The notes below the pieces were generated by a model that was given only the letters and a program-made list of their open reading frames with translations, did not search any database and was not told the origin of the DNA. Made by a program: the position numbers and the translations under genes. Below, one piece after another: positions 3,083-53,945 of a stretch of DNA of 64,000 bases. Origin of the DNA: Lytechinus pictus (taxonomy: Eukaryota); the NCBI RefSeq assembly GCF_037042905.1, contig NC_087255.1, positions 2,170,001 to 2,234,000 on the forward strand. The letters run 5' to 3'. Positions within the stretch are counted from its first letter, which is position 1. Each line of letters begins with the position of its first letter.

Positions 3083-4029
3083 TAAATCACATGATTCTTT
3101 CAATTCTGTTTCAAACAATTAGTCGATTTGACAGTCCAATAGGCTCAATACACCAACCTAGAAATGTTCTTTCCGATGAAGTTTTTTTCTTGATTCGCGT
3201 TCATATGGGGTCCTAGAACAAATTCAGCTTGGTTGCCCAAAGTTGCCGTTTGGGCAATTTTGCTAATTTGCATAAATCCAAAATGGCCGCCAGATGCCAT
3301 CTTGAAAACCTAACTTTCGAACCCCTTTTCCCAAAATGATAAGTAATGACTCTTTTTAGGGGTTTAGAGGTGTGTAGAACCGATATCTGTTATCATTTTT
3401 GCAATATAAGGTCATCTTCAGGTCAAATCCAAGATGGCCGCCAGATGCCATCTTGAAAAATTGACTTTTGATCCCATTGCCCCAGAATGACTAGTAATAC
3501 CTCTGTTTAGGGGTTTTGGGGGGTGTAGAATCTCTTTCTGCTTTCTATTTTGAAATGTAATGTTATCTTCAGGTCAAATCCAAGATGGCGGCCATATATG
3601 ACGCCATCTTGAAATATCAACTTTTGAACCCTTTGCCCCAGAATCATGAATAATAACTCGATTCGTGAGTCATTTGGTATGTTGATTAAATTAATGCTGT
3701 AATTTTGCATAAAGGATAAACTTCAGATCAAATCCAAGATGGCCGCCAACCGCCATCTTGAAAAAAATGTTTTCCGAGGCTTATACGTGTAAGAGCTAAT
3801 GTAAAGGGATTTCAGTAAGAACACTAATTTCTTTTAATTATCAAGTTTTTAGATCAAGGTGATGTTACATCTTAGATGTCAGATTTTGACATTAACTGCT
3901 CACCTTAGAATGAATCCTCTTTAAGTTTGGGCTATGATCCATTTCGCGTGTATTTTTATTTTTAGAGTCTTATTTGAATTTGAAAGTGTTTTCTCAATAT
4001 TATTTTTTTTCTAAATCAATGTGTTCAAT

Positions 4030-4990
4030 GATTGGTAGGCATCAGTTCGCCTTAAAAGACGATGGTGTAGCGCTAGGTCTTACATTCTCGAGAGTGACTG
4101 TAGAGCTCCACTCTAGAGTGGCAGTCTCTAGAGCAAATCTGTACAGGAGGAGGATGGCGCTGAGACAGGTTTATATAGAGATTCTGCCCTAGCCTTCCTC
4201 CTAGGTCTTTGGTCTGCCATTTTAGCATTCCGATTATTACCTGTACTATAGTAGCTCTCCATAGAATGGCGACTATCGTCTACATCTTCATAAGTGTTAG
4301 TGTCTATGCCGGCAAGTTTTATGTCACATTTGCAGTTGTCTCTATAACGGAGGTGTGATCTACCGATGGGAGTGAGACCAATCACACAGCTCACCTTACC
4401 TTGGCGAATCCAAGAAGGGATTCGCCAAGGTTACCTGCGGCGAACATGCCCCAACCACTTGAGGTGCCTTTGGCTAAGGAGCGAGAATAAGCTTGGGATG
4501 CCAGCACGTACGCTGAAGAGCGTCTGTATTTTTCACGTTGTCCTGCCATTTAATGTGCATGATACGTCCGAGGCAGCTGACATGGAAGGTGTTTAGCCGC
4601 TTTACTTGGTCGGCGTACGTTTTCCAGGACTTACTTCCGTTCAGGAGCTTGGCCATGACTGTCACAGATTTTACTATCCAGGGGGCCGTTTCATAAAGCT
4701 GTTAAGTTAAGAGTGACTATAAGAACGACTGGTGATTCTTTCTTGCGGTAAATGATATCAACCATTGGTGATTATTTAGCATGTAAGAAAGGTTCACCAA
4801 TCATTCCTTAAGTTGCTCTTAACTTTGTTGAAACACCCACCTGGTGGGTGAGAGGCAGGGGCGACATCGTTTCCGTACAACATTTTACACATGAGAACCA
4901 TCCTGACCATGGAACAGTCTTGGGGGCCTATCTTCTGCAGGAGGCTAAATAGTGCACTCCTGCTGACCAAGTCGATGGCTCTTGTCAGGG
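4030..4990 (-). pseudogene. Degenerate, internally deleted RTE-clade LINE (reverse transcriptase and C-terminal fragments)
   Basis: Minus-strand pieces LTRAIDLVSRSALFSLLQKIG (DLxKAFDxV motif region, ~4920-4990), LNTFHVSCLGRIMHIKWQDNVKN, HLKWLGHVR, GRSHLRYRDNCKCDIK and terminal RDCHSRVELYSHSREC. These are characteristic of RTE ORFs. Frameshifted and interrupted by a MITE. Confidence 0.8.
4679..4843. mobile_element. MITE (CAGGGGGC...CCCACCTG family), inserted in the LINE relic
   Basis: Palindromic arms TTTCATAAAGCTGTT..TAAGAGTGACT..GAACGACTGGTGA. Homologous to the copy at 24026-24218. Confidence 0.8.
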
Positions 4991-7900
4991 GGAAAAGTCC
5001 AAAAGTCCAATAATAATAATAAAGGAATTTGATAAGTTAACTAATTTTTTGAAAAAAATACGGAGAAATCAGTTTTTGATTCAAATAATACTTTAAAGTC
5101 CTTTCACTAGAAAAGTATGGTTGAACAGAACTAATAAAACGATTAGAACTCCCAAAATCATAGCCCAAACCGTGAATGGTTTCATTCTAAAGTAAGCGGT
5201 TAATGATGAAATCCATCAACCATCTGACAATATTAGACATGACTTGACCTCGAACTAAAAATGGGGTGATTAAAAGAATTGAATCATTTTCACTGAAATC
5301 CCCTTACATGAGCTCCCACACATAATGGTATCCTTATTAGGGAGAGTACTTCTTCAAGGTTTAATAGTCTCGGGAAATAGTTTTTTTTTAATATGGGGTT
5401 TTGCGGCCATGTTGGATTATTTTGACCTGGAGATGATCCTATATTGCAAAATTATTGACAGAAATGGAATCAACGTACCAAATAATTGACGAAAAGAGGG
5501 ATTATTCATGATTTTGGGACAAAAACTTAAGAATTAATAAAAGAAATTCTTACTGAAATCCCTTTACATTAGCTCTTACATGTATAAGCCCCGGAAAGTA
5601 ATTTTTCAAGATGGCGGTTGGCGGCCATCTTGGATTTGATATGAAGATTATTCCTTATGCAAAATTACAGCATTAATTTAATCAACATACCAAATGACTC
5701 ACGAATCGAGTTATTATTCATGATTCTGGGGCAAAGGGTTCAAAAGTTGATATTTCAAGATGGCGTCATATATGGCGGCCATCTTGGATTTGACCTGAAG
5801 ATAACATTACATTGCAAATTAGAAAGCAGAGAGAGATTCTACACCCCCCAAAACCCCTAAACAGAGGTATTACTGGTCATTCTGGGGCAATATGGATCAA
5901 AAGTCAATTTTTCAAGATGGCATCTGGCGGCCATCTTGGATTTGACCTGAAGATGACCTTGTATTGCAAAAATGATAACAGATATCGGTTCTACACACCT
6001 CTAAACCCCTAAAAAGAGTCATTACTCATCATTTTGGGAAAAAGGGTTCGAAAGTTAGGTTTTCAAGATGGCATCTGGCGGCCATTTTGGATTTATGCAA
6101 ATTAGCAAAATTGCCCAAACGGCAACTTTGGGCAACCAAGCTGAATTTGTTCTAGGACCCCATATGAACACGAATCAAGAAAAAAACTTCATCGGAAAGA
6201 ACATTTCTAGGTTCGGAAAATGTCAAATCGACTAAATAGTCATGCTCGGCCATTATGATAGTATTTCCGCCCTCAACGTTAAAGTATAGTCAATGCAATC
6301 GGTATCGCAAGGGTTTTTTTTTCTTCTTTTTCATTTATAATCTCTGGCAAAGACAGTGATGAGTGTTATGTTGATCAGCAGTTCAAGTTTCATTGTTCCA
6401 TAATAAAATTTTGCTGTAGATTCAACACAATGACACAATCGGATGGGAGGGGGCTCTAACGAATGCAAGACAAGTGTCTTGACATAGTTTATAGTTACTA
6501 TACATACTTATTTGTGTTGAGGAAGTTCACAATTAACCTTTGTGCCAAGATATCGTGAACACAACGCTAATACTTCTAAATGATTTGTCGTACAACATTT
6601 TGTTAGAGATAATCAAATAATTGTAGGCTTATGGGTAACTGTGTTTCTTGACTTTTCCCCTATAATTTTGATCGGGGGGGGGGGGGGAGGGGGGTGCCTC
6701 CTTTTGGAACAAACACGATGTGCGTTATGGTATGTGGGGACTCTGTACCAATTTCAGATGGTTACTGATTGTACGTGGAAATTATGAAAACTCATTGTGA
6801 GTTTGTTCTATTATCGTTTATATGACAACTCTGAATTGCTAGAAAAAAATGAATTATTGATCAATGATCAAGTTTAAAGGGTTTGCAGGGTATTTTAAGG
6901 TTATTGTTGTTTCACTGCGATGGAGTGTAAGTAATCTGCTCTTTCTTGCTCCATTCAGAACCAGAAGAAAACGATAGCTCGACATGCTCGAGGTTCTATT
7001 AGAAGTTTTCTCATCATAACTTTTGTAATTGTTGGTATTTTATTTTTTATTTGGATTTTTGTTTTAGTTCTAATTTCATTATCTTCGGAAGATTTGATAC
7101 TGGATGTCATTCATGGTCATAAGATAAGTTGTATAATTGATAAAGATTGACTTTGATTAGCAGTTGATATTTACGTCTAGAGTTATGAGGGACTCGTTAT
7201 TTTGGTGATTGAATCTATTAGTTTTCAGGGCGTATTAATATCGGGGTAAACAGAATGCCTATTGGCACCCTCAAACTTGTTATCAGATAGGGAATGTTTT
7301 TAATTTGAAGGATGTTTGGTTTATGATGTAAGTATATCTAGAACAAACAATTATCTCCTAATTATACCGAGGTAGTTGGCCTAATTCTAAACAGGAAAGA
7401 GTGAAAATGACAACATCCAATGTGATAATATCGTTCATTTTACATCAGACAAAGCCGGCAGACCCATGTTTTCGTTTTCGATCAGATTCTTGTAACTGTT
7501 TTCCGTTGTTTTATCCGAACGGTATCAGCACATAATCCCTTTGGTTGGCCGCCATATCCGTCCATCCATCAGCGGAGAGGGACTTAGCCGATCTGGGACT
7601 CTTTCTTCGCCGTCTCTCTCGGCGTGCAATCGTCCTGACGACCGCCTCCAGTGTAGAGGGCCCGCGTGCAGTCGCTCGAGGTGGGGTTTTACGCAGACTC
7701 ACAAAAAGTGGATGAATAAGAAGACAAGGAGCAAAGCACCCGCTGTGTTTGCCGAGCGGATTAGCGGCCAACCAAAACTTGTTAACGGGGGATCAGCCGG
7801 CTCGGAAGTAGCGCTCGATAGGGTTACTGCCAACAAAGTTTCAGCAGGGGTTCCTACCGATTATCTCGTTATATTCACACCTGCGTGATAAAGGTCTTAG

Positions 7901-14822: not shown

Positions 14823-15425
14823 AGGACAAGTCCACCCCAACAAAAACTTGATTCGAATAAAAAGAGAAAAATTCAACAAGCATAACACTGAAAATTTCAT
14901 CAAAATCGGATGTAAAATAAGAAAGTTATGACATTTTAAATTTTCGCTTCATTTCACAAAAGAGTTATATGCACATCCCGGTCGGTATGCAAATGAGGGA
15001 CCTGATGACATCACTCACTCACTATTTCTTTTGTATTTTATTATATGAATTATGAAATATTTTGATTTTCTCGTCATTGTCATGTGAAATGAAGTTTCAT
15101 TCCTCCCTGAATACGTGGAATTCCATTATTTTAACATTTTGTGGTTCAGGCAAGGAGGTCCTAATCGTCAAATTCGTAAAAATTGAAATATTGTATAATT
15201 CAAACAATAAAAAACAAAAGAAATAGTGAGTGAGTGACATCATCGACTCTCTAATTTGGATGTAACTGGCTCGTTCATATAACTATTTTGTTAAAAATAA
15301 GCGAAACTTTGAAATGTCAGAACTTTCTTATTTTACATCCGATTTTGATGAAATTTTCAGCATTGTGCTTGTCTGATTTTTCTCTATTGATTCAAATCAA
15401 CATTTTGTTGGAGTGGACTTGACCT
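14823..15425. mobile_element. Kolobok-like MITE (TTAA target)
   Basis: TTAA TSD (14819-14822, 15426-15429). TIR AGGACAAGTCCACCCCAACAAAA / TTTTGTTGGAGTGGACTTGACCT with long imperfect inverted arms. Same family as 41492-42095. Confidence 0.85.
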
Positions 15426-19194: not shown

Positions 19195-19500
19195 GACTAT
19201 ACCTACTGCTNNNNNNNNNNNNNNNNNNNNNNNNNNNNNNNNNNNNNNNNNNNNNNNNNNNNNNNNNNNNNNNNNNNNNNNNNNNNNNNNNNNNNNNNNN
19301 NNNNNNNNNNNNNNNNNNNNNNNNNNNNNNNNNNNNNNNNNNNNNNNNNNNNNNNNNNNNNNNNNNNNNNNNNNNNNNNNNNNNNNNNNNNNNNCTACTA
19401 TTACTAATTATAGTACTACTACTGCTACTATTATTACTGCTACCACTACTATTACTACTACTACTACTACTTCTTCTTCTGCTGCTGCTGCAGCTTCTGC
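19195..19500. repeat. (CTA)n microsatellite with assembly gap
   Basis: CTA/CTG/CTT triplets flank an N run. Confidence 0.85.
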
Positions 19501-40096: not shown

Positions 40097-41166
40097 ATGC
40101 TGAATCGGCTCGCGGTTCAGAACCGCGAGCCGATTCAAGTGTAAACACGGTAAAAGTGACATGAAATATATTGCTTAATCATTTTCCAAGTCTTCCCGTG
40201 ACCTTATTTTATTCACTCGTCTCCCTCCTCTTATTTTTCCTCTTCCCTTTTCCTACTTTCTTTCCCCTTCTTTTTCTTTTTTTCTTTCTTTCCCCCTTTT
40301 TTTCATTTTTTTTGCTCCGCCAATAGGGGGGGGGGGGCGGGACCCCTCGGGCCCCCTGGATCCGCCTATGCTGCCCATCGTCTGTCCTAGTATTCGTAAT
40401 ATCATGACCCTATTCTAACATACATCCACACCAAGCATTTAAAATCAACACTGCTCATGGCGTTCAAGGAATAGTAGTTTAAAAAGCACAATCATTTTGA
40501 GGTGATTGTTTCGTTTACCTGGAGGCGGCATACCATCTCATTGGCCCAGATCTCATTTACTTGGGATTTGTTGAAGTGTCTTTTGATAGTCAACTATACA
40601 AACATGAGGATTTAGAAGAACTCAGATGATGAGCCCTCTCCAACCTCATCGTATTCATCGTCATCATCGTGGGATTGGAAGCCGGTTTGGTTTACTCGTG
40701 TTTAATCATCATCATACAGGTCTTAAAGAGAAGATTGACCTCTGGGATATACGACATCCAATACGGATAACAGAGCTTCTAATATTGGGTTCGGAAAGCA
40801 TCATATACCCTACACAGATGCCCCTCACCCTCCCTCCAAGACCCCTATACCGAAAAGAAACAAATATCTCCTTTCACACAAATGTGATGATAAACACTTG
40901 ATTTGAGTCAAGTAACAACCCTAATTGGTCAAAGAACAAATGCAGATTTTGCTATCGATGAAAGTTTCAACCGTTTCATTGATTATTTCAATTCCATTCA
41001 AAGAAAATGTCATCACAACATGGCATGTATGGGTTGACTTCGTGCCAAATTTGAGAATGTCTATGAATAAAAAGAACATGGCGAGAAAGCACAAATCTTG
41101 ATCTGATTAATGATGAACAGATCAGGGAAGGTAAAGATGCTAAAATGTCAGAATACGATCTCGTCT

Positions 41167-41491
41167 TTAAGGGGAAGATATCCACCGTCTCCGCCCAGTC
41201 ATCTCGTCCCCTGGTGCCCTAGACCCTGGGGGTGATGTCCAAAGTAGTATAGCTCCATGGTAGTATCATGATCCCACTCCCCGTCACTGTCCCGTGGGGT
41301 CGATCCTTAAAGTGATGTCTTCTAGGGATTCCTCAAGGGAGATCAACCTGTATGCATATGAGATGTGTACCGTATTTGACGACTTTGGAATGAGAAAATG
41401 TCACCCATCATGATTATAAAGTTGCAAATGAGTAAGGGGAAAGGTTACTAAGATAAAAGATGAACCTTGACCATGTTGACGTTGTTTTTAA
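41167..41491 (+). repeat. Direct duplication, copy 1 (TTAA to TTAA)
   Basis: Aligns with 42096-42384 apart from a few substitutions and four short multi-base indels. Confidence 0.92.
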
Positions 41492-42095
41492 AGGTCAAGT
41501 CCACCCCAGTAAAGCGTAGATCTGAATGAATAGAGAAAAAAAAAAAACTAGCATAACACTGAAAATTTCATCAAAATCGGATGTAAAATAGGAAAATTAT
41601 GGCATTTTAAAGTTTCGCTTATATTTCACAAAACAGTAATATGCACAACTCAGGGACATGCAAATGAGTCAGTCGATGATGTCCATCACTCACTATTTCT
41701 TTTGTTTTTTATTGTTTGAATTATACAATATTTAATTTTTTATAGATTTGACAATAAGGACCAACTTGACTGAACCATATAGTATTAAACAATGCTAATT
41801 CCACATGTTCAGGGCGGAATTAATTGTTGTATCACTTACCAATGAGGAGAAAATTAGAATATTTAATATTTCTCATAATAAAATACAAAAGAAATAGTGA
41901 GTGGATGACGTCATAGTCTCCTCATTTGCATACCAGCCAGTATGTGCATATAACTGTTTTGTGAAATTAAGCGAAACTTTAAAATGTCATAACTTTCTTC
42001 TTTTACATCCGATTTTGATGAAATTTTAAGTGTTATGCTTGTTGGATTTTTGGCTTTTTATTCAAATCAACTTTTTGTTGGGATGGACTTGTCCT
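41492..42095. mobile_element. Kolobok-like MITE (TTAA target), inverted relative to 14823-15425
   Basis: TTAA at 41488-41491 and 42096-42099. TIR AGGTCAAGTCCACCCCA / TGGGATGGACTTGTCCT. Confidence 0.85.
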
Positions 42096-42384
42096 TTAAG
42101 GGAAGATATCCACCGTCTCCGCCCAGTCATCTCATCCCCTGGTGCCCTAGACCCTGGGGGTGATGTCCAAAGTAGTATCATGATCCGTGGGGTCGATCCT
42201 TAAAGTGATGTCTTCTAGGGATTCCTCAAGGAAGATCAACCTGTATGCATATGAAATGTGTACCGTATTCATGGTATTTGACGACTTTGGAATGAGAAAA
42301 TGTCACCCATCATGATTATAAAGTTGCAAATGAGTAAGGGGAAATGTTACTAAGATAAGAGATGAACCTTGACGTTGTTTTTAA
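42096..42384 (+). repeat. Direct duplication, copy 2 (TTAA to TTAA)
   Basis: Aligns with 41167-41491. Confidence 0.92.
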
Positions 42385-42903
42385 GGTTACACTTCGTAAT
42401 TCCGAAGGTTCGTAATTCCGAAACACGCAAATTGCCTATATATACCTCGATGTTCGTTAATCCGAAAACGTAAAAGGGTTCGTTAATCCGAACATTTGTG
42501 GCGTTATTCCGAAGGTTCGTTATTCCGAAGGTTCGATAATCCGAAAACGAAATAAGGTTCGATGTTCCGAAGGTTCGTTAATCCGAAAACGAAATAAGGT
42601 TCATTGTTCCGAAGGTTCGTTTATCCGAAAACGAAATAAGGTTCATTGTTCCGAAGGTTCGTTAGTCCGAAAACGAAATAAGGTAAGTTAATCATTTAGT
42701 TTTCGGACAAACGAACCTTCGGAATTACGAACCTCATTTCTTTTTCGGATTAACGAACCTTCGGAATTACGAACCTCACTTTGTTTTCGGACTAACGAAC
42801 CTTCGGAACTACGAACCTTCGGAAATACGAACCTTCGGAATAACGAACCTTCGGAATATCCGAACCTTCGGAATAACGAAGCTTCGGAATTACGAATGTA
42901 TGC
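42385..42903. mobile_element. Foldback-type element built from ~15-bp TTCCGAAGGTTCGT(A/T)A subrepeats in opposing orientation
   Basis: Left half repeats TTCCGAAGGTTCG, right half repeats CGAACCTTCGGAA. Ends TTCGTAATTCCGAAG / CTTCGGAATTACGAA. Confidence 0.75.
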
Positions 42904-42932
42904 GGTTTTGGTTTGTCCATCCTTAACCCAAA

Positions 42933-43318
42933 TGGTAAATTGCCAATTCGTCTATTGCCAACTCGTCCACCCATCACATGGTCTACCTTGATGCCATTCA
43001 GTCCATCAACATTTCGTCTATCAACCATTTGACCCAGCTACCATTTGGTCCATTCATCACTTCGTCTAATCACCAGTTCATCTATGACCATTTATTATCA
43101 TAACCAGTTGGTCTAATACACATTTTATTTTCGTCCATTTCGCCCAATAAACGCTTAGTCCAATGAGACCAAATGGTATATGGCTATCAGATCAACTGGT
43201 TATTAGACGGAATGGCATTAGACGAAATGGCAATAAGACCATGTGGATAGTGGACGAACTGATGGAAGGTCAAGTAATAGTAGACGCGTTAGTACTTGGG
43301 TGAATTGACATTATACCA
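42933..43318. mobile_element. Degenerate MITE with short GTCTA/TAGAC subrepeats
   Basis: Imperfect TIR TGGTAAATTGCCAATTC / GAATTGACATTATACCA. Periodic GGTCTA/CGTCTA motifs switch to TAGACG/TAGACC in the right part. Confidence 0.55.
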
Positions 43319-44605
43319 ATTGAAAATAAATCCTATTCGATCGATAGTCCTTCACCTTTCTGCTTGTAATGTGAAGGAACAACACAATGATTCGCGGTTA
43401 CTTTTTGATCAGGCTTCCACATGGATGGTCATGAAAACTGAAATGTGAAAATAAATGAGGTTTTATTAGTGACACAATAACAGGCCAATTATGAGTTATA
43501 CAAACGTTTATTCATACAATAAACGTGAGAAAATTAGCGGTTTGCTTTGATGAGTTTGTTGGTTACAGGATCCAGATCAACTCTTTCAAAACATTGACTT
43601 TTTAACGGTTTCGGATTGCTCTAAATATTAGAATTTTTATCCTACATAAAACAAATGGGATAATTATTTAGGATTTAAATACGGTAGCGATTACCTACTG
43701 CAAAAGGATTTTTTTCATAAGGGTACACTCAAAATCTTACTGATTGTAATATGGGGTAAATAAAAATCAATAATTGGAATGAGAAATCAACTACATTGGT
43801 ATATCCCGTACTAGGTTTTTTTATATATGTATGTGTGTTTGGGGGGGGGGGGAGGGTGGGTTCACGTCATAAGTTTGGTTATCGTCGACATCAAATGATT
43901 ATCAACATATGTCCACATTTCAGTCCCAGATAATCTTACTAAAGGGGGGGGGGGGGTGCACCCCTCGAATGCTTCGTTTGTAGGGCTCTGTTGATAGTTT
44001 ATATGTCTCTTTATCATTATTCCGTCCTTATCGACCTGAAAAGGTAATAGTTTTAAACTAAATTTATGCGGTATGTTTCATATACAATTCAAATACTGTA
44101 TTGCAGATACTAAAAAAAACACATACATTTTGAATTGTAAATCATGTTCCAACCTATAATGTGCAAACAGAAATTATAATCTTCATTATTATCATGAGAA
44201 TAAGGATGATGGTGATGATTATCAATTATGGTAATGATAATAACAACGATAATCATTGACATTGAGCAACCAGAGAACATACAGGTATTCTCAATATACT
44301 TGACATCTATAATAAAAAAATATTTATATTTTTTTTAATGAAAGAATATAGTAGAAATGATTGATAATTGCCATAAGGTAATTAGAACTAGTATGGGACT
44401 GTGAAATCAATGTTTGTCTCTGATATCTCAGATATTTGGGCAAGGCTATTTTATCGGAAGATAATGAAAACATTCAAAAATATTCAAAGATGTTGCTCGG
44501 ACGTTTGTTACATTTGAAAAGTCGAATAATTTAGCCATCTGATTATTAAAAGTGTGATTGGTAGGGTACATGTTTTGATTGTCATGCCTGCAAAGCAACG
44601 AACTG

Positions 44606-53708: not shown

Positions 53709-53945
53709 NNNNNNNNNNNNNNNNNNNNNNNNNNNNNNNNNNNNNNNNNNNNNNNNNNNNNNNNNNNNNNNNNNNNNNNNNNNNNNNNNNNNNNNNNNNN
53801 NNNNNNNNNNNNNNNNNNNNNNNNNNNNNNNNNNNNNNNNNNNNNNNNNNNNNNNGTAGTAGTATTAATAGTATTAGTATTAATAGCAGTAGCACTAGTA
53901 GTAATAGTAGTAGTAGTAGTAGTAGTAGAAGTAGAAGTAGTAATA

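What the first reader, a model, noticed from the sequence alone, without database searches (positions are those of the whole stretch)
41167..42384. 'Giant target-site duplication': a TTAA-to-TTAA ~300-bp segment duplicated on both sides of a Kolobok-like MITE
Seen: the structure is TTAA-X-TTAA-[MITE]-TTAA-X'-TTAA. X (41167-41491, 325 bp) and X' (42096-42384, 289 bp) are homologous, and both begin and end exactly at the element's TTAA target motif. Established: TTAA-specific elements normally duplicate only 4 bp. Inference: either the two transposon ends attacked two different TTAA sites ~320 bp apart (e.g. on sister chromatids), or two alleles carrying the MITE at neighbouring TTAA sites recombined through it. 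Either route is a transposon-driven way of duplicating host non-coding DNA.
Basis: partly seen in the sequence, partly recalled or inferred. Interest (0 to 1): 0.72.

Follow-up and report, generated by a model that had tools for sequence, protein, structure and literature searches.

The report
Transposon-flanking 300-bp duplication bounded by TTAA
A unique ~300-bp stretch of non-coding sea-urchin DNA is present twice, once on each side of a small TTAA-inserting jumping gene and cut exactly at that element's TTAA target on all four edges, which is best read as a rare mis-aimed transposition of a kind already known from fly P elements and maize Ac, here unverified by reads.

Summary
X (41167-41491) and X' (42096-42384) are homologous: 280 aligned bases, 5 substitutions, 5 indels. 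Both run from TTAA to TTAA and flank a 604-bp foldback MITE (41492-42095).

The MITE belongs to a family with at least 4,754 copies. It has AGG termini and TTAA duplications, the Kolobok / T2-MITE hallmarks. It was active very recently: copies at unrelated loci differ by only 0.3-1%. None of 37 other copies has such a flank repeat.

Best reading: transposase joined the element's two ends to two TTAA sites 321 bp apart. The most likely route is hybrid-element (sister-chromatid) insertion of a resident copy. A single widely staggered integration gives the same product and cannot be excluded.

The chimaera test gave no support for recombination between two insertions. The dating test is not decisive.

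This is a new example of a known kind of event, of moderate interest. The CATG scars that distinguish X from X' were noted before by this scan.

The parts
41167..41170 (.). TTAA(1), outer left boundary of the duplication
   Evidence: Homology between X and X' begins exactly here.
41171..41487 (.). X, left copy of the duplicated unique non-coding segment
   Evidence: Only two copies in the 812-Mb genome. No ORF of note and no Rfam match.
41488..41491 (.). TTAA(2), left target-site copy abutting the MITE
41492..42095 (.). M1: 604-bp foldback MITE with AGG termini and an 18-nt terminal inverted repeat; Kolobok/T2-like
   Evidence: 8,758 first-look candidates. 4,754 exact genome matches to TTAA plus the 18-nt left end, against 0 for the control. 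TTAA on both sides in 26 of 29 copies. Inverted arms shown.
42096..42099 (.). TTAA, right target-site copy abutting the MITE, which is also the start of X' (copy of TTAA(1))
42100..42380 (.). X', right copy of the duplicated segment
   Evidence: 84% identity over the full length with gaps counted; 98.2% at aligned positions.
42381..42384 (.). TTAA, outer right boundary (copy of TTAA(2)); directly abuts a second MITE
42385..42904 (.). M2: unrelated foldback MITE built of 16/42-bp arrays, from a family that makes 8-9-bp target duplications. It is neighbouring context, not part of the duplication.

Best explanation
The duplication is real and was made by transposase. The two ends of the Kolobok-like MITE were joined to two different TTAA sites 321 bp apart, so the DNA between them, with both TTAAs, now lies on both sides of the element.

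Most likely route (inferred):
1. A copy was already resident at one of the two TTAAs.
2. After replication, transposase paired its left end on one sister chromatid with its right end on the other.
3. This 'hybrid element' inserted at the neighbouring TTAA.
4. One chromatid received U-TTAA-X-TTAA-[MITE]-TTAA-X-TTAA-D. The other received the reciprocal deletion of X.

This is hybrid element insertion / sister-chromatid alternative transposition.

Shown: the anatomy, the uniqueness of X, the TTAA specificity and the recent activity of the family. Inferred: the route.
For: - All four boundaries are the element's own target motif, arranged exactly as the model predicts.
- X and the DNA to its left are single-copy in the genome, so X is host DNA and not a repeat.
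- There is one MITE only, at the junction, and none at the outer ends. This is the criterion used to separate alternative transposition from unequal recombination in maize (PMC3744419).
- The family is TTAA-specific.
- The family was still moving when X/X' (1.8% apart) arose. Copy pairs at unrelated loci are 0.3-1.0% apart and their flanks are unrelated.
- Target TTAAs are close by, at 41107, 41167, 41307 and 41488. Nearby targets would fit the local insertion known for P-element hybrid insertion (my recollection of Gray 1996 and Preston 1996; not read here).
- The MITE copy is 5.3% from the family consensus against 1.8% between X and X'. This is compatible with an older resident copy.
Against: - This is a single case. 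0 of 37 other copies examined has a flank repeat, so nothing shows the process is recurrent.
- Hybrid insertion has not been shown for Kolobok or any TTAA element, as far as my searches and memory reach.
- The product is identical to that of a widely staggered single integration.
- The age argument is weak. A cut-and-paste copy carries its old private mutations with it when it moves, so 5.3% does not date its arrival here.
- No reads, second haplotype or sister species could be consulted.
Confidence: 0.55

Rival explanations
1. True giant target-site duplication. A single excised MITE integrated with its two ends attacking opposite strands at two TTAA sites 321 bp apart. Strand-displacement fill-in then copied the interval on both sides.
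For: - It gives exactly the observed structure, including all four TTAAs (worked through).
- Rare long duplications are documented for other DDE-type integrations and for LINEs: HERV-K 111-450 bp, two of them with pre-integration alleles (PMC5488345); Dualen median about 900 bp and R9 126 bp (PMC9977147).
- The family was active at the right time.
Against: - No precedent that I could find for a cut-and-paste TTAA transposase.
- The fixed geometry of a synaptic complex makes a 321-bp stagger unlikely without looping.
- The MITE copy looks older than the duplication, although that argument is weak for cut-and-paste elements.
Confidence: 0.22
2. Homologous recombination through the MITE, between two alleles or chromatids that carried independent insertions of the family at the two neighbouring TTAAs.
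For: - It gives the same product.
- The family is abundant.
- This copy has subfamily-A states at the eight independent markers (seven substitutions and the 11-bp deletion) of the left half that define subfamily B, and B states at three sites in the right half.
Against: - The same A-left/B-right combination occurs in copy L019, and partly in L016 and L026, at other loci. It is therefore an intermediate subfamily and not a recombinant made here.
- The unusual left-arm patch is private to this copy; the best other copy matches at 91%.
- Differences from the consensus are balanced between the halves, 18 vs 17.
- The route needs two independent hits 321 bp apart, both segregating, plus a crossover within 604 bp.
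Confidence: 0.08
3. An ordinary tandem duplication of X arose first, through TTAA microhomology. The MITE later landed by chance in the junction TTAA.
For: Four-base microhomology is typical of small tandem duplications (general knowledge). The junction TTAA would be a legitimate target.
Against: It needs three coincidences: both breakpoints at TTAA, and then an insertion in exactly that TTAA. My rough estimate is about 0.1 such case expected genome-wide, using the copy number. No other local two-copy duplication of unique DNA is seen in the window.
Confidence: 0.06
4. Assembly artefact: the two alleles of X were placed in tandem around a shared MITE.
For: - X and X' differ by about as much as I would expect of two alleles in a polymorphic sea urchin (my impression).
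- Reads could not be consulted.
Against: - No N run lies near the locus; the nearest are at 19211-19394 and 53709-53855.
- A mis-join would not be expected to start X' exactly at TTAA(1). It would need the MITE at different TTAAs in the two haplotypes, the same improbable premise as the recombination model.
- No alternative haplotig holding U or X exists in the assembly.
Confidence: 0.06

Closest known systems
Hybrid element insertion of Drosophila P elements (Gray, Tanaka & Sved 1996; Preston, Sved & Engels 1996; as cited in PMC3744419)
   Same: Ends of one element taken from sister chromatids or homologues insert nearby. This leaves the element at the junction of a flanking direct duplication, with a reciprocal deletion on the other product.
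   Different: It involves a different superfamily (P, 8-bp target) and was shown experimentally. Here the element is a TTAA-specific Kolobok-like MITE, the case is a single natural product, and no reciprocal allele is in hand. The original papers were not held in the library, so the detail rests on PMC3744419 and on my own knowledge.
Alternative transposition of maize Ac/Ds: sister-chromatid and reversed-ends transposition, giving tandem direct duplications (PMC3744419)
   Same: The result is a tandem direct duplication with a transposon at the junction, no element at the outer ends, and a breakpoint at a transposase target.
   Different: The maize cases use two nearby elements or termini and span 8 kb to 5 Mb. 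Here one 604-bp MITE is involved and the duplication is 0.3 kb.
Unusually long target-site duplications of HERV-K HML-2 (PMC5488345), Dualen and R9 LINEs (PMC9977147)
   Same: Host DNA of 100-900 bp is duplicated on both sides of an insertion.
   Different: Those are retroelements with no fixed target motif. Here both edges are the element's TTAA motif and the element is a cut-and-paste MITE.
Kolobok superfamily / T2-MITEs of Xenopus (PMC6004289)
   Same: TTAA target and purine-purine (AG/AGG) termini, in a short, high-copy foldback element.
   Different: The Xenopus motif is AGGRR; here the ends read AGGTC and AGGAC. No transposase partner was identified in this genome.

Membership tests
MITE (non-autonomous DNA transposon) | Short, with terminal inverted repeats, high copy number and no coding capacity | tested here: met
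   604 bp. The 18-nt termini are inverted, with long internal inverted arms. At least 4,754 exact end matches. No ORF of 50 aa or more lies wholly inside the element.
Kolobok superfamily | TTAA target-site duplication | tested here: met
   26 of 29 close copies have TTAA on both sides; the other three have one mutated side.
Kolobok superfamily | Purine-purine (AG) terminal nucleotides; AGGRR in T2-MITEs (PMC6004289) | tested here: met
   The ends read AGGTC... and, on the other strand, AGGAC.... AGG is met; the RR that follows it is only half met.
Kolobok superfamily | An autonomous partner with the same termini that encodes a Kolobok-type DDE transposase | not tested
piggyBac superfamily | TTAA target with CCC...GGG termini (own knowledge) | tested here: not met
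   The TTAA target is met, but the termini are AGG...CCT, not CCC...GGG.
Alternative-transposition / hybrid-element-insertion product | A single element at the junction of a direct duplication of flanking host DNA, with none at the outer ends | tested here: met
Alternative-transposition / hybrid-element-insertion product | Breakpoints at the transposase's target motif, with target copies on both sides | tested here: met
   Four TTAAs sit at the four boundaries.
Alternative-transposition / hybrid-element-insertion product | A progenitor allele with the resident element and a single X, and a reciprocal deletion product | not testable with these tools
No second haplotype is in the assembly.
Bona fide target-site duplication (made at insertion) | An empty pre-integration allele with one X and no element, and no intermediate allele | not testable with these tools
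   Same limits as the row above.

The most novel reading that the evidence does not exclude
A TTAA-specific cut-and-paste transposase made a true 329-bp target-site duplication in one step, by attacking two separate TTAA sites. If so, Kolobok-type MITEs (at least 4,754 copies here, and still active) would be a direct, recurrent source of small segmental duplications of host DNA in sea urchins.
Probability: 0.2. Interest if true: 0.6.

Novelty: new member of a known kind. Interest (0 to 1): 0.38.

Why it matters
If it is real in the animal, this is a clean natural footprint of aberrant transposition by a Kolobok-type MITE. It would show that a still-active, very abundant TTAA element can copy adjacent host DNA as well as insert itself.

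The four TTAA edges make the event easy to recognise. A genome-wide scan of the several thousand copies could therefore measure how often such elements seed small duplications.

On present evidence it is one case, of a kind already established for P and Ac elements.

Tried and rejected
1. **X as a dispersed repeat or mobile element: rejected.** X has two copies only, and the left flank U has one. X also has no inverted termini (by eye).
2. **X-MITE-X' as an LTR-like or TRIM-like unit: rejected.** X is unique, it lacks TG...CA ends, and the interior is an independent multicopy MITE with its own TTAA duplication.
3. **Chimaera test.** The left and right halves at first looked like different subfamilies. 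The same combination exists at other loci, so it is a subfamily state. The left-arm patch of 10 differences in 35 bp has no donor elsewhere.
4. **Dating.** The MITE is 5.3% from the consensus while X/X' are 1.8% apart. Poisson P is 0.03 to 3e-8 against simultaneity. I do not rely on this, because a cut-and-paste copy keeps its old mutations when it moves.
5. **Family scan.** 37 other copies with about 1.0-1.5 kb of flank on most sides (three had under 0.6 kb on one side) gave no second case. Two copies sit in satellite arrays.
7. **Scar-making transposon.** I looked for a 5-bp-duplication element with CA...TG ends that could make the CATG scars. The best hit, window 3593-5774, turned out to be the inner part of a longer inverted repeat and not a transposon with a target duplication.
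8. **Original P-element papers.** They are not held in the library.

Full report
**Observation.**

Reading the window and the repeat search confirm the layout:
- TTAA(41167)-X-TTAA(41488)
- a 604-bp element at 41492-42095
- TTAA(42096)-X'-TTAA(42381)

A global alignment of X (325 bp) and X' (289 bp) gives 280 aligned positions, 5 substitutions (4 of them G/A transitions) and five indels of 1, 16, 19, 9 and 9 bp. Homology begins at the first base of the left TTAA and ends at the last base of the right TTAA. Outside those points the neighbours are unrelated. It is the only spaced local direct repeat of 70 bp or more in the 64-kb window.

**Is X host DNA or a repeat?**

- A whole-genome search of the 812-Mb assembly with X finds only these two places.
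- The 607 bp to the left of X are single-copy.
- X has no ORF of note and no Rfam match.

There is also no alternative haplotig of the locus in the assembly.

**The element (M1).**

- It is a foldback MITE with 18-nt inverted termini that begin AGG, and long internal inverted arms.
- The genome search gave 8,758 first-look candidates.
- The exact string TTAA plus the 18-nt left end occurs 4,754 times, against 0 for the reversed control.
- In 29 close full-length copies, 26 have TTAA on both sides and 3 have one mutated side.
- A TTAA target with AG/AGG termini is how Kolobok elements and their T2-MITEs are defined (PMC6004289). From my own knowledge, piggyBac ends begin CCC.

'Kolobok-like' is therefore reasonable. 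No transposase partner was examined.

**Is the flank duplication a family habit?**

I compared 37 other independent copies, with about 1.0-1.5 kb of flank on most sides (three had less than 0.6 kb on one side). None has a flank direct repeat adjoining the element. Two lie inside satellite arrays.

**Mechanism.**

I worked through the strand joins for three routes. All three give exactly U-TTAA-X-TTAA-[M1]-TTAA-X-TTAA-D.

| Route | What happens |
|---|---|
| (a) One-step giant duplication | One integration whose two ends attack opposite strands at two TTAAs 321 bp apart, followed by fill-in |
| (b) Hybrid-element insertion | The left end of a resident copy on one sister chromatid and the right end on the other insert at the neighbouring TTAA. 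This yields the duplication on one chromatid and a deletion of X on the other. |
| (c) Recombination | Crossing-over inside the MITE between two alleles that carry it at the two different TTAAs |

Route (b) is established for P elements and, in related forms, for Ac/Ds. In maize the product is a tandem direct duplication with the element at the junction and none at the outer ends (PMC3744419). Route (a) has precedents only for retroelements:
- HERV-K, 111-450 bp (PMC5488345)
- Dualen, about 900 bp, and R9, 126 bp (PMC9977147)

**Tests between the routes.**

- *Chimaera test (for route c).* This copy has subfamily-A states at the eight independent left-half markers that define subfamily B (seven substitutions and an 11-bp deletion). 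It has B states at three right-half sites. However, copy L019 elsewhere in the genome has the same combination, and L016 and L026 have partial ones. The pattern is therefore an intermediate subfamily, not a recombinant made here. The dense patch of private differences in the left arm has no donor anywhere; the best other copy matches at 91%. Differences from the consensus are balanced between the halves. Route (c) gains no support.
- *Dating.* M1 is 5.3% from the 30-copy consensus, where other copies are 2.0-5.3%. X and X' are 1.8% apart. If the copies of X had been made when M1 arrived, and M1 had been new then, 11-30 substitutions would be expected against the 5 seen. But a cut-and-paste copy keeps its old mutations when it moves, so this does not date its arrival. 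I treat it only as compatible with a resident copy.
- *Activity.* Copy pairs at unrelated loci are 0.3-1.0% apart and their flanks are unrelated. Transposase was therefore available in the period when X/X' arose.

**Non-transposase alternatives.**

- *Duplication first.* A tandem duplication through TTAA microhomology, followed by an insertion in exactly the junction TTAA, needs three coincidences. With roughly 1 insertion per 1,000 TTAA sites, I estimate about 0.1 such case per genome.
- *Assembly artefact.* A mis-join would not be expected to begin X' exactly at TTAA(1). It would need the MITE at different TTAAs in the two haplotypes. No N run is near the locus.

**Verdict.**

The event is best read as a transposase-made flanking duplication. 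Hybrid-element (sister-chromatid) insertion is the most likely route, and a one-step giant duplication is the main rival. It is a new example of a known kind of event, in a superfamily where I know of no earlier example. It rests on one locus in one assembly.

**Side observations.**

- Three of the five indels between X and X' are direct repeats around CATG. Two are the clean form, a 5-mer, then CATG, then the same 5-mer. Across the window this form occurs 16 times. The same form with 4-mers occurs twice and with 6-mers not at all, and CATG is the commonest of all 256 central tetramers. Another reader of this scan noted the same scars on this stretch. A related TA-CATG-TA scar field was reported elsewhere in the genome. 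From the window density, X plus X' should hold about 0.15 such scars of any age. They hold two that must be younger than the duplication.
- The element to the right (M2, 42385-42904) belongs to a family with 8-9-bp target duplications, but here its two flanks match at only 5 of 8 positions. 'TAA' stands next to its left end, and copy L054 shows the same oddity.

Other agents' notes call the genome a sea urchin. I did not test that.

Noticed in passing
window 41467-41480, 42265-42278, 41244-41259; also 775, 1021, 2229, 6978, 13261, 17785, 22274, 26503, 46079, 46505, 49290, 56326, 57653, 58768: Micro-insertions of the form 5-mer, CATG, same 5-mer occur 16 times in 64 kb. The form with 4-mers occurs twice and with 6-mers not at all, and CATG is the top central tetramer. 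They look like excision scars of an unidentified transposon with a 5-bp target duplication and CA...TG ends. Two clean ones, plus a 7-mer variant, are among the few differences between X and X'. That is far more than the window density predicts (about 0.15 expected).
   Followed up: partly
window 42385-42904 (M2) and locus L054: M2 is a foldback MITE made of 16- and 42-bp arrays, with 2,314 first-look candidates. Its family makes 8-9-bp target duplications. In this copy the flanks match at only 5 of 8 positions, and 'TAA' stands next to the left end where the right flank has GGT. Copy L054 shows the same TAA-versus-GGT/GTT pattern. This is unexplained.
   Followed up: partly
window 41509-41545: There is a cluster of 10 private differences from the family consensus within 35 bp of the MITE's left arm, including a lengthened A run. 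No other genomic copy shares them; the best match is 91%.
   Followed up: yes
window 42931-43330: A third, older foldback repeat (M3) lies here. It is about 80% identical to its 3,934 first-look candidates and lies 26 bp right of M2. The locus is therefore a cluster of three unrelated MITEs.
   Followed up: partly
window 14823-15425: A relative of M1, about 81% identical over both arms with a different centre, is present in the same window.
   Followed up: no
window 3560-5800: A long inverted repeat has arms that run outward past 3593 and 5774 and encloses about 2 kb. It first looked like a transposon with a 5-bp target duplication, but the inverted arms continue beyond the supposed ends.
   Followed up: partly
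window 41171-41174 vs 42100-42102: A one-base difference (GGGG vs GGG) lies immediately next to the TTAA at the start of X and X'. It may be a homopolymer slip or a trace of the joining event.
   Followed up: no
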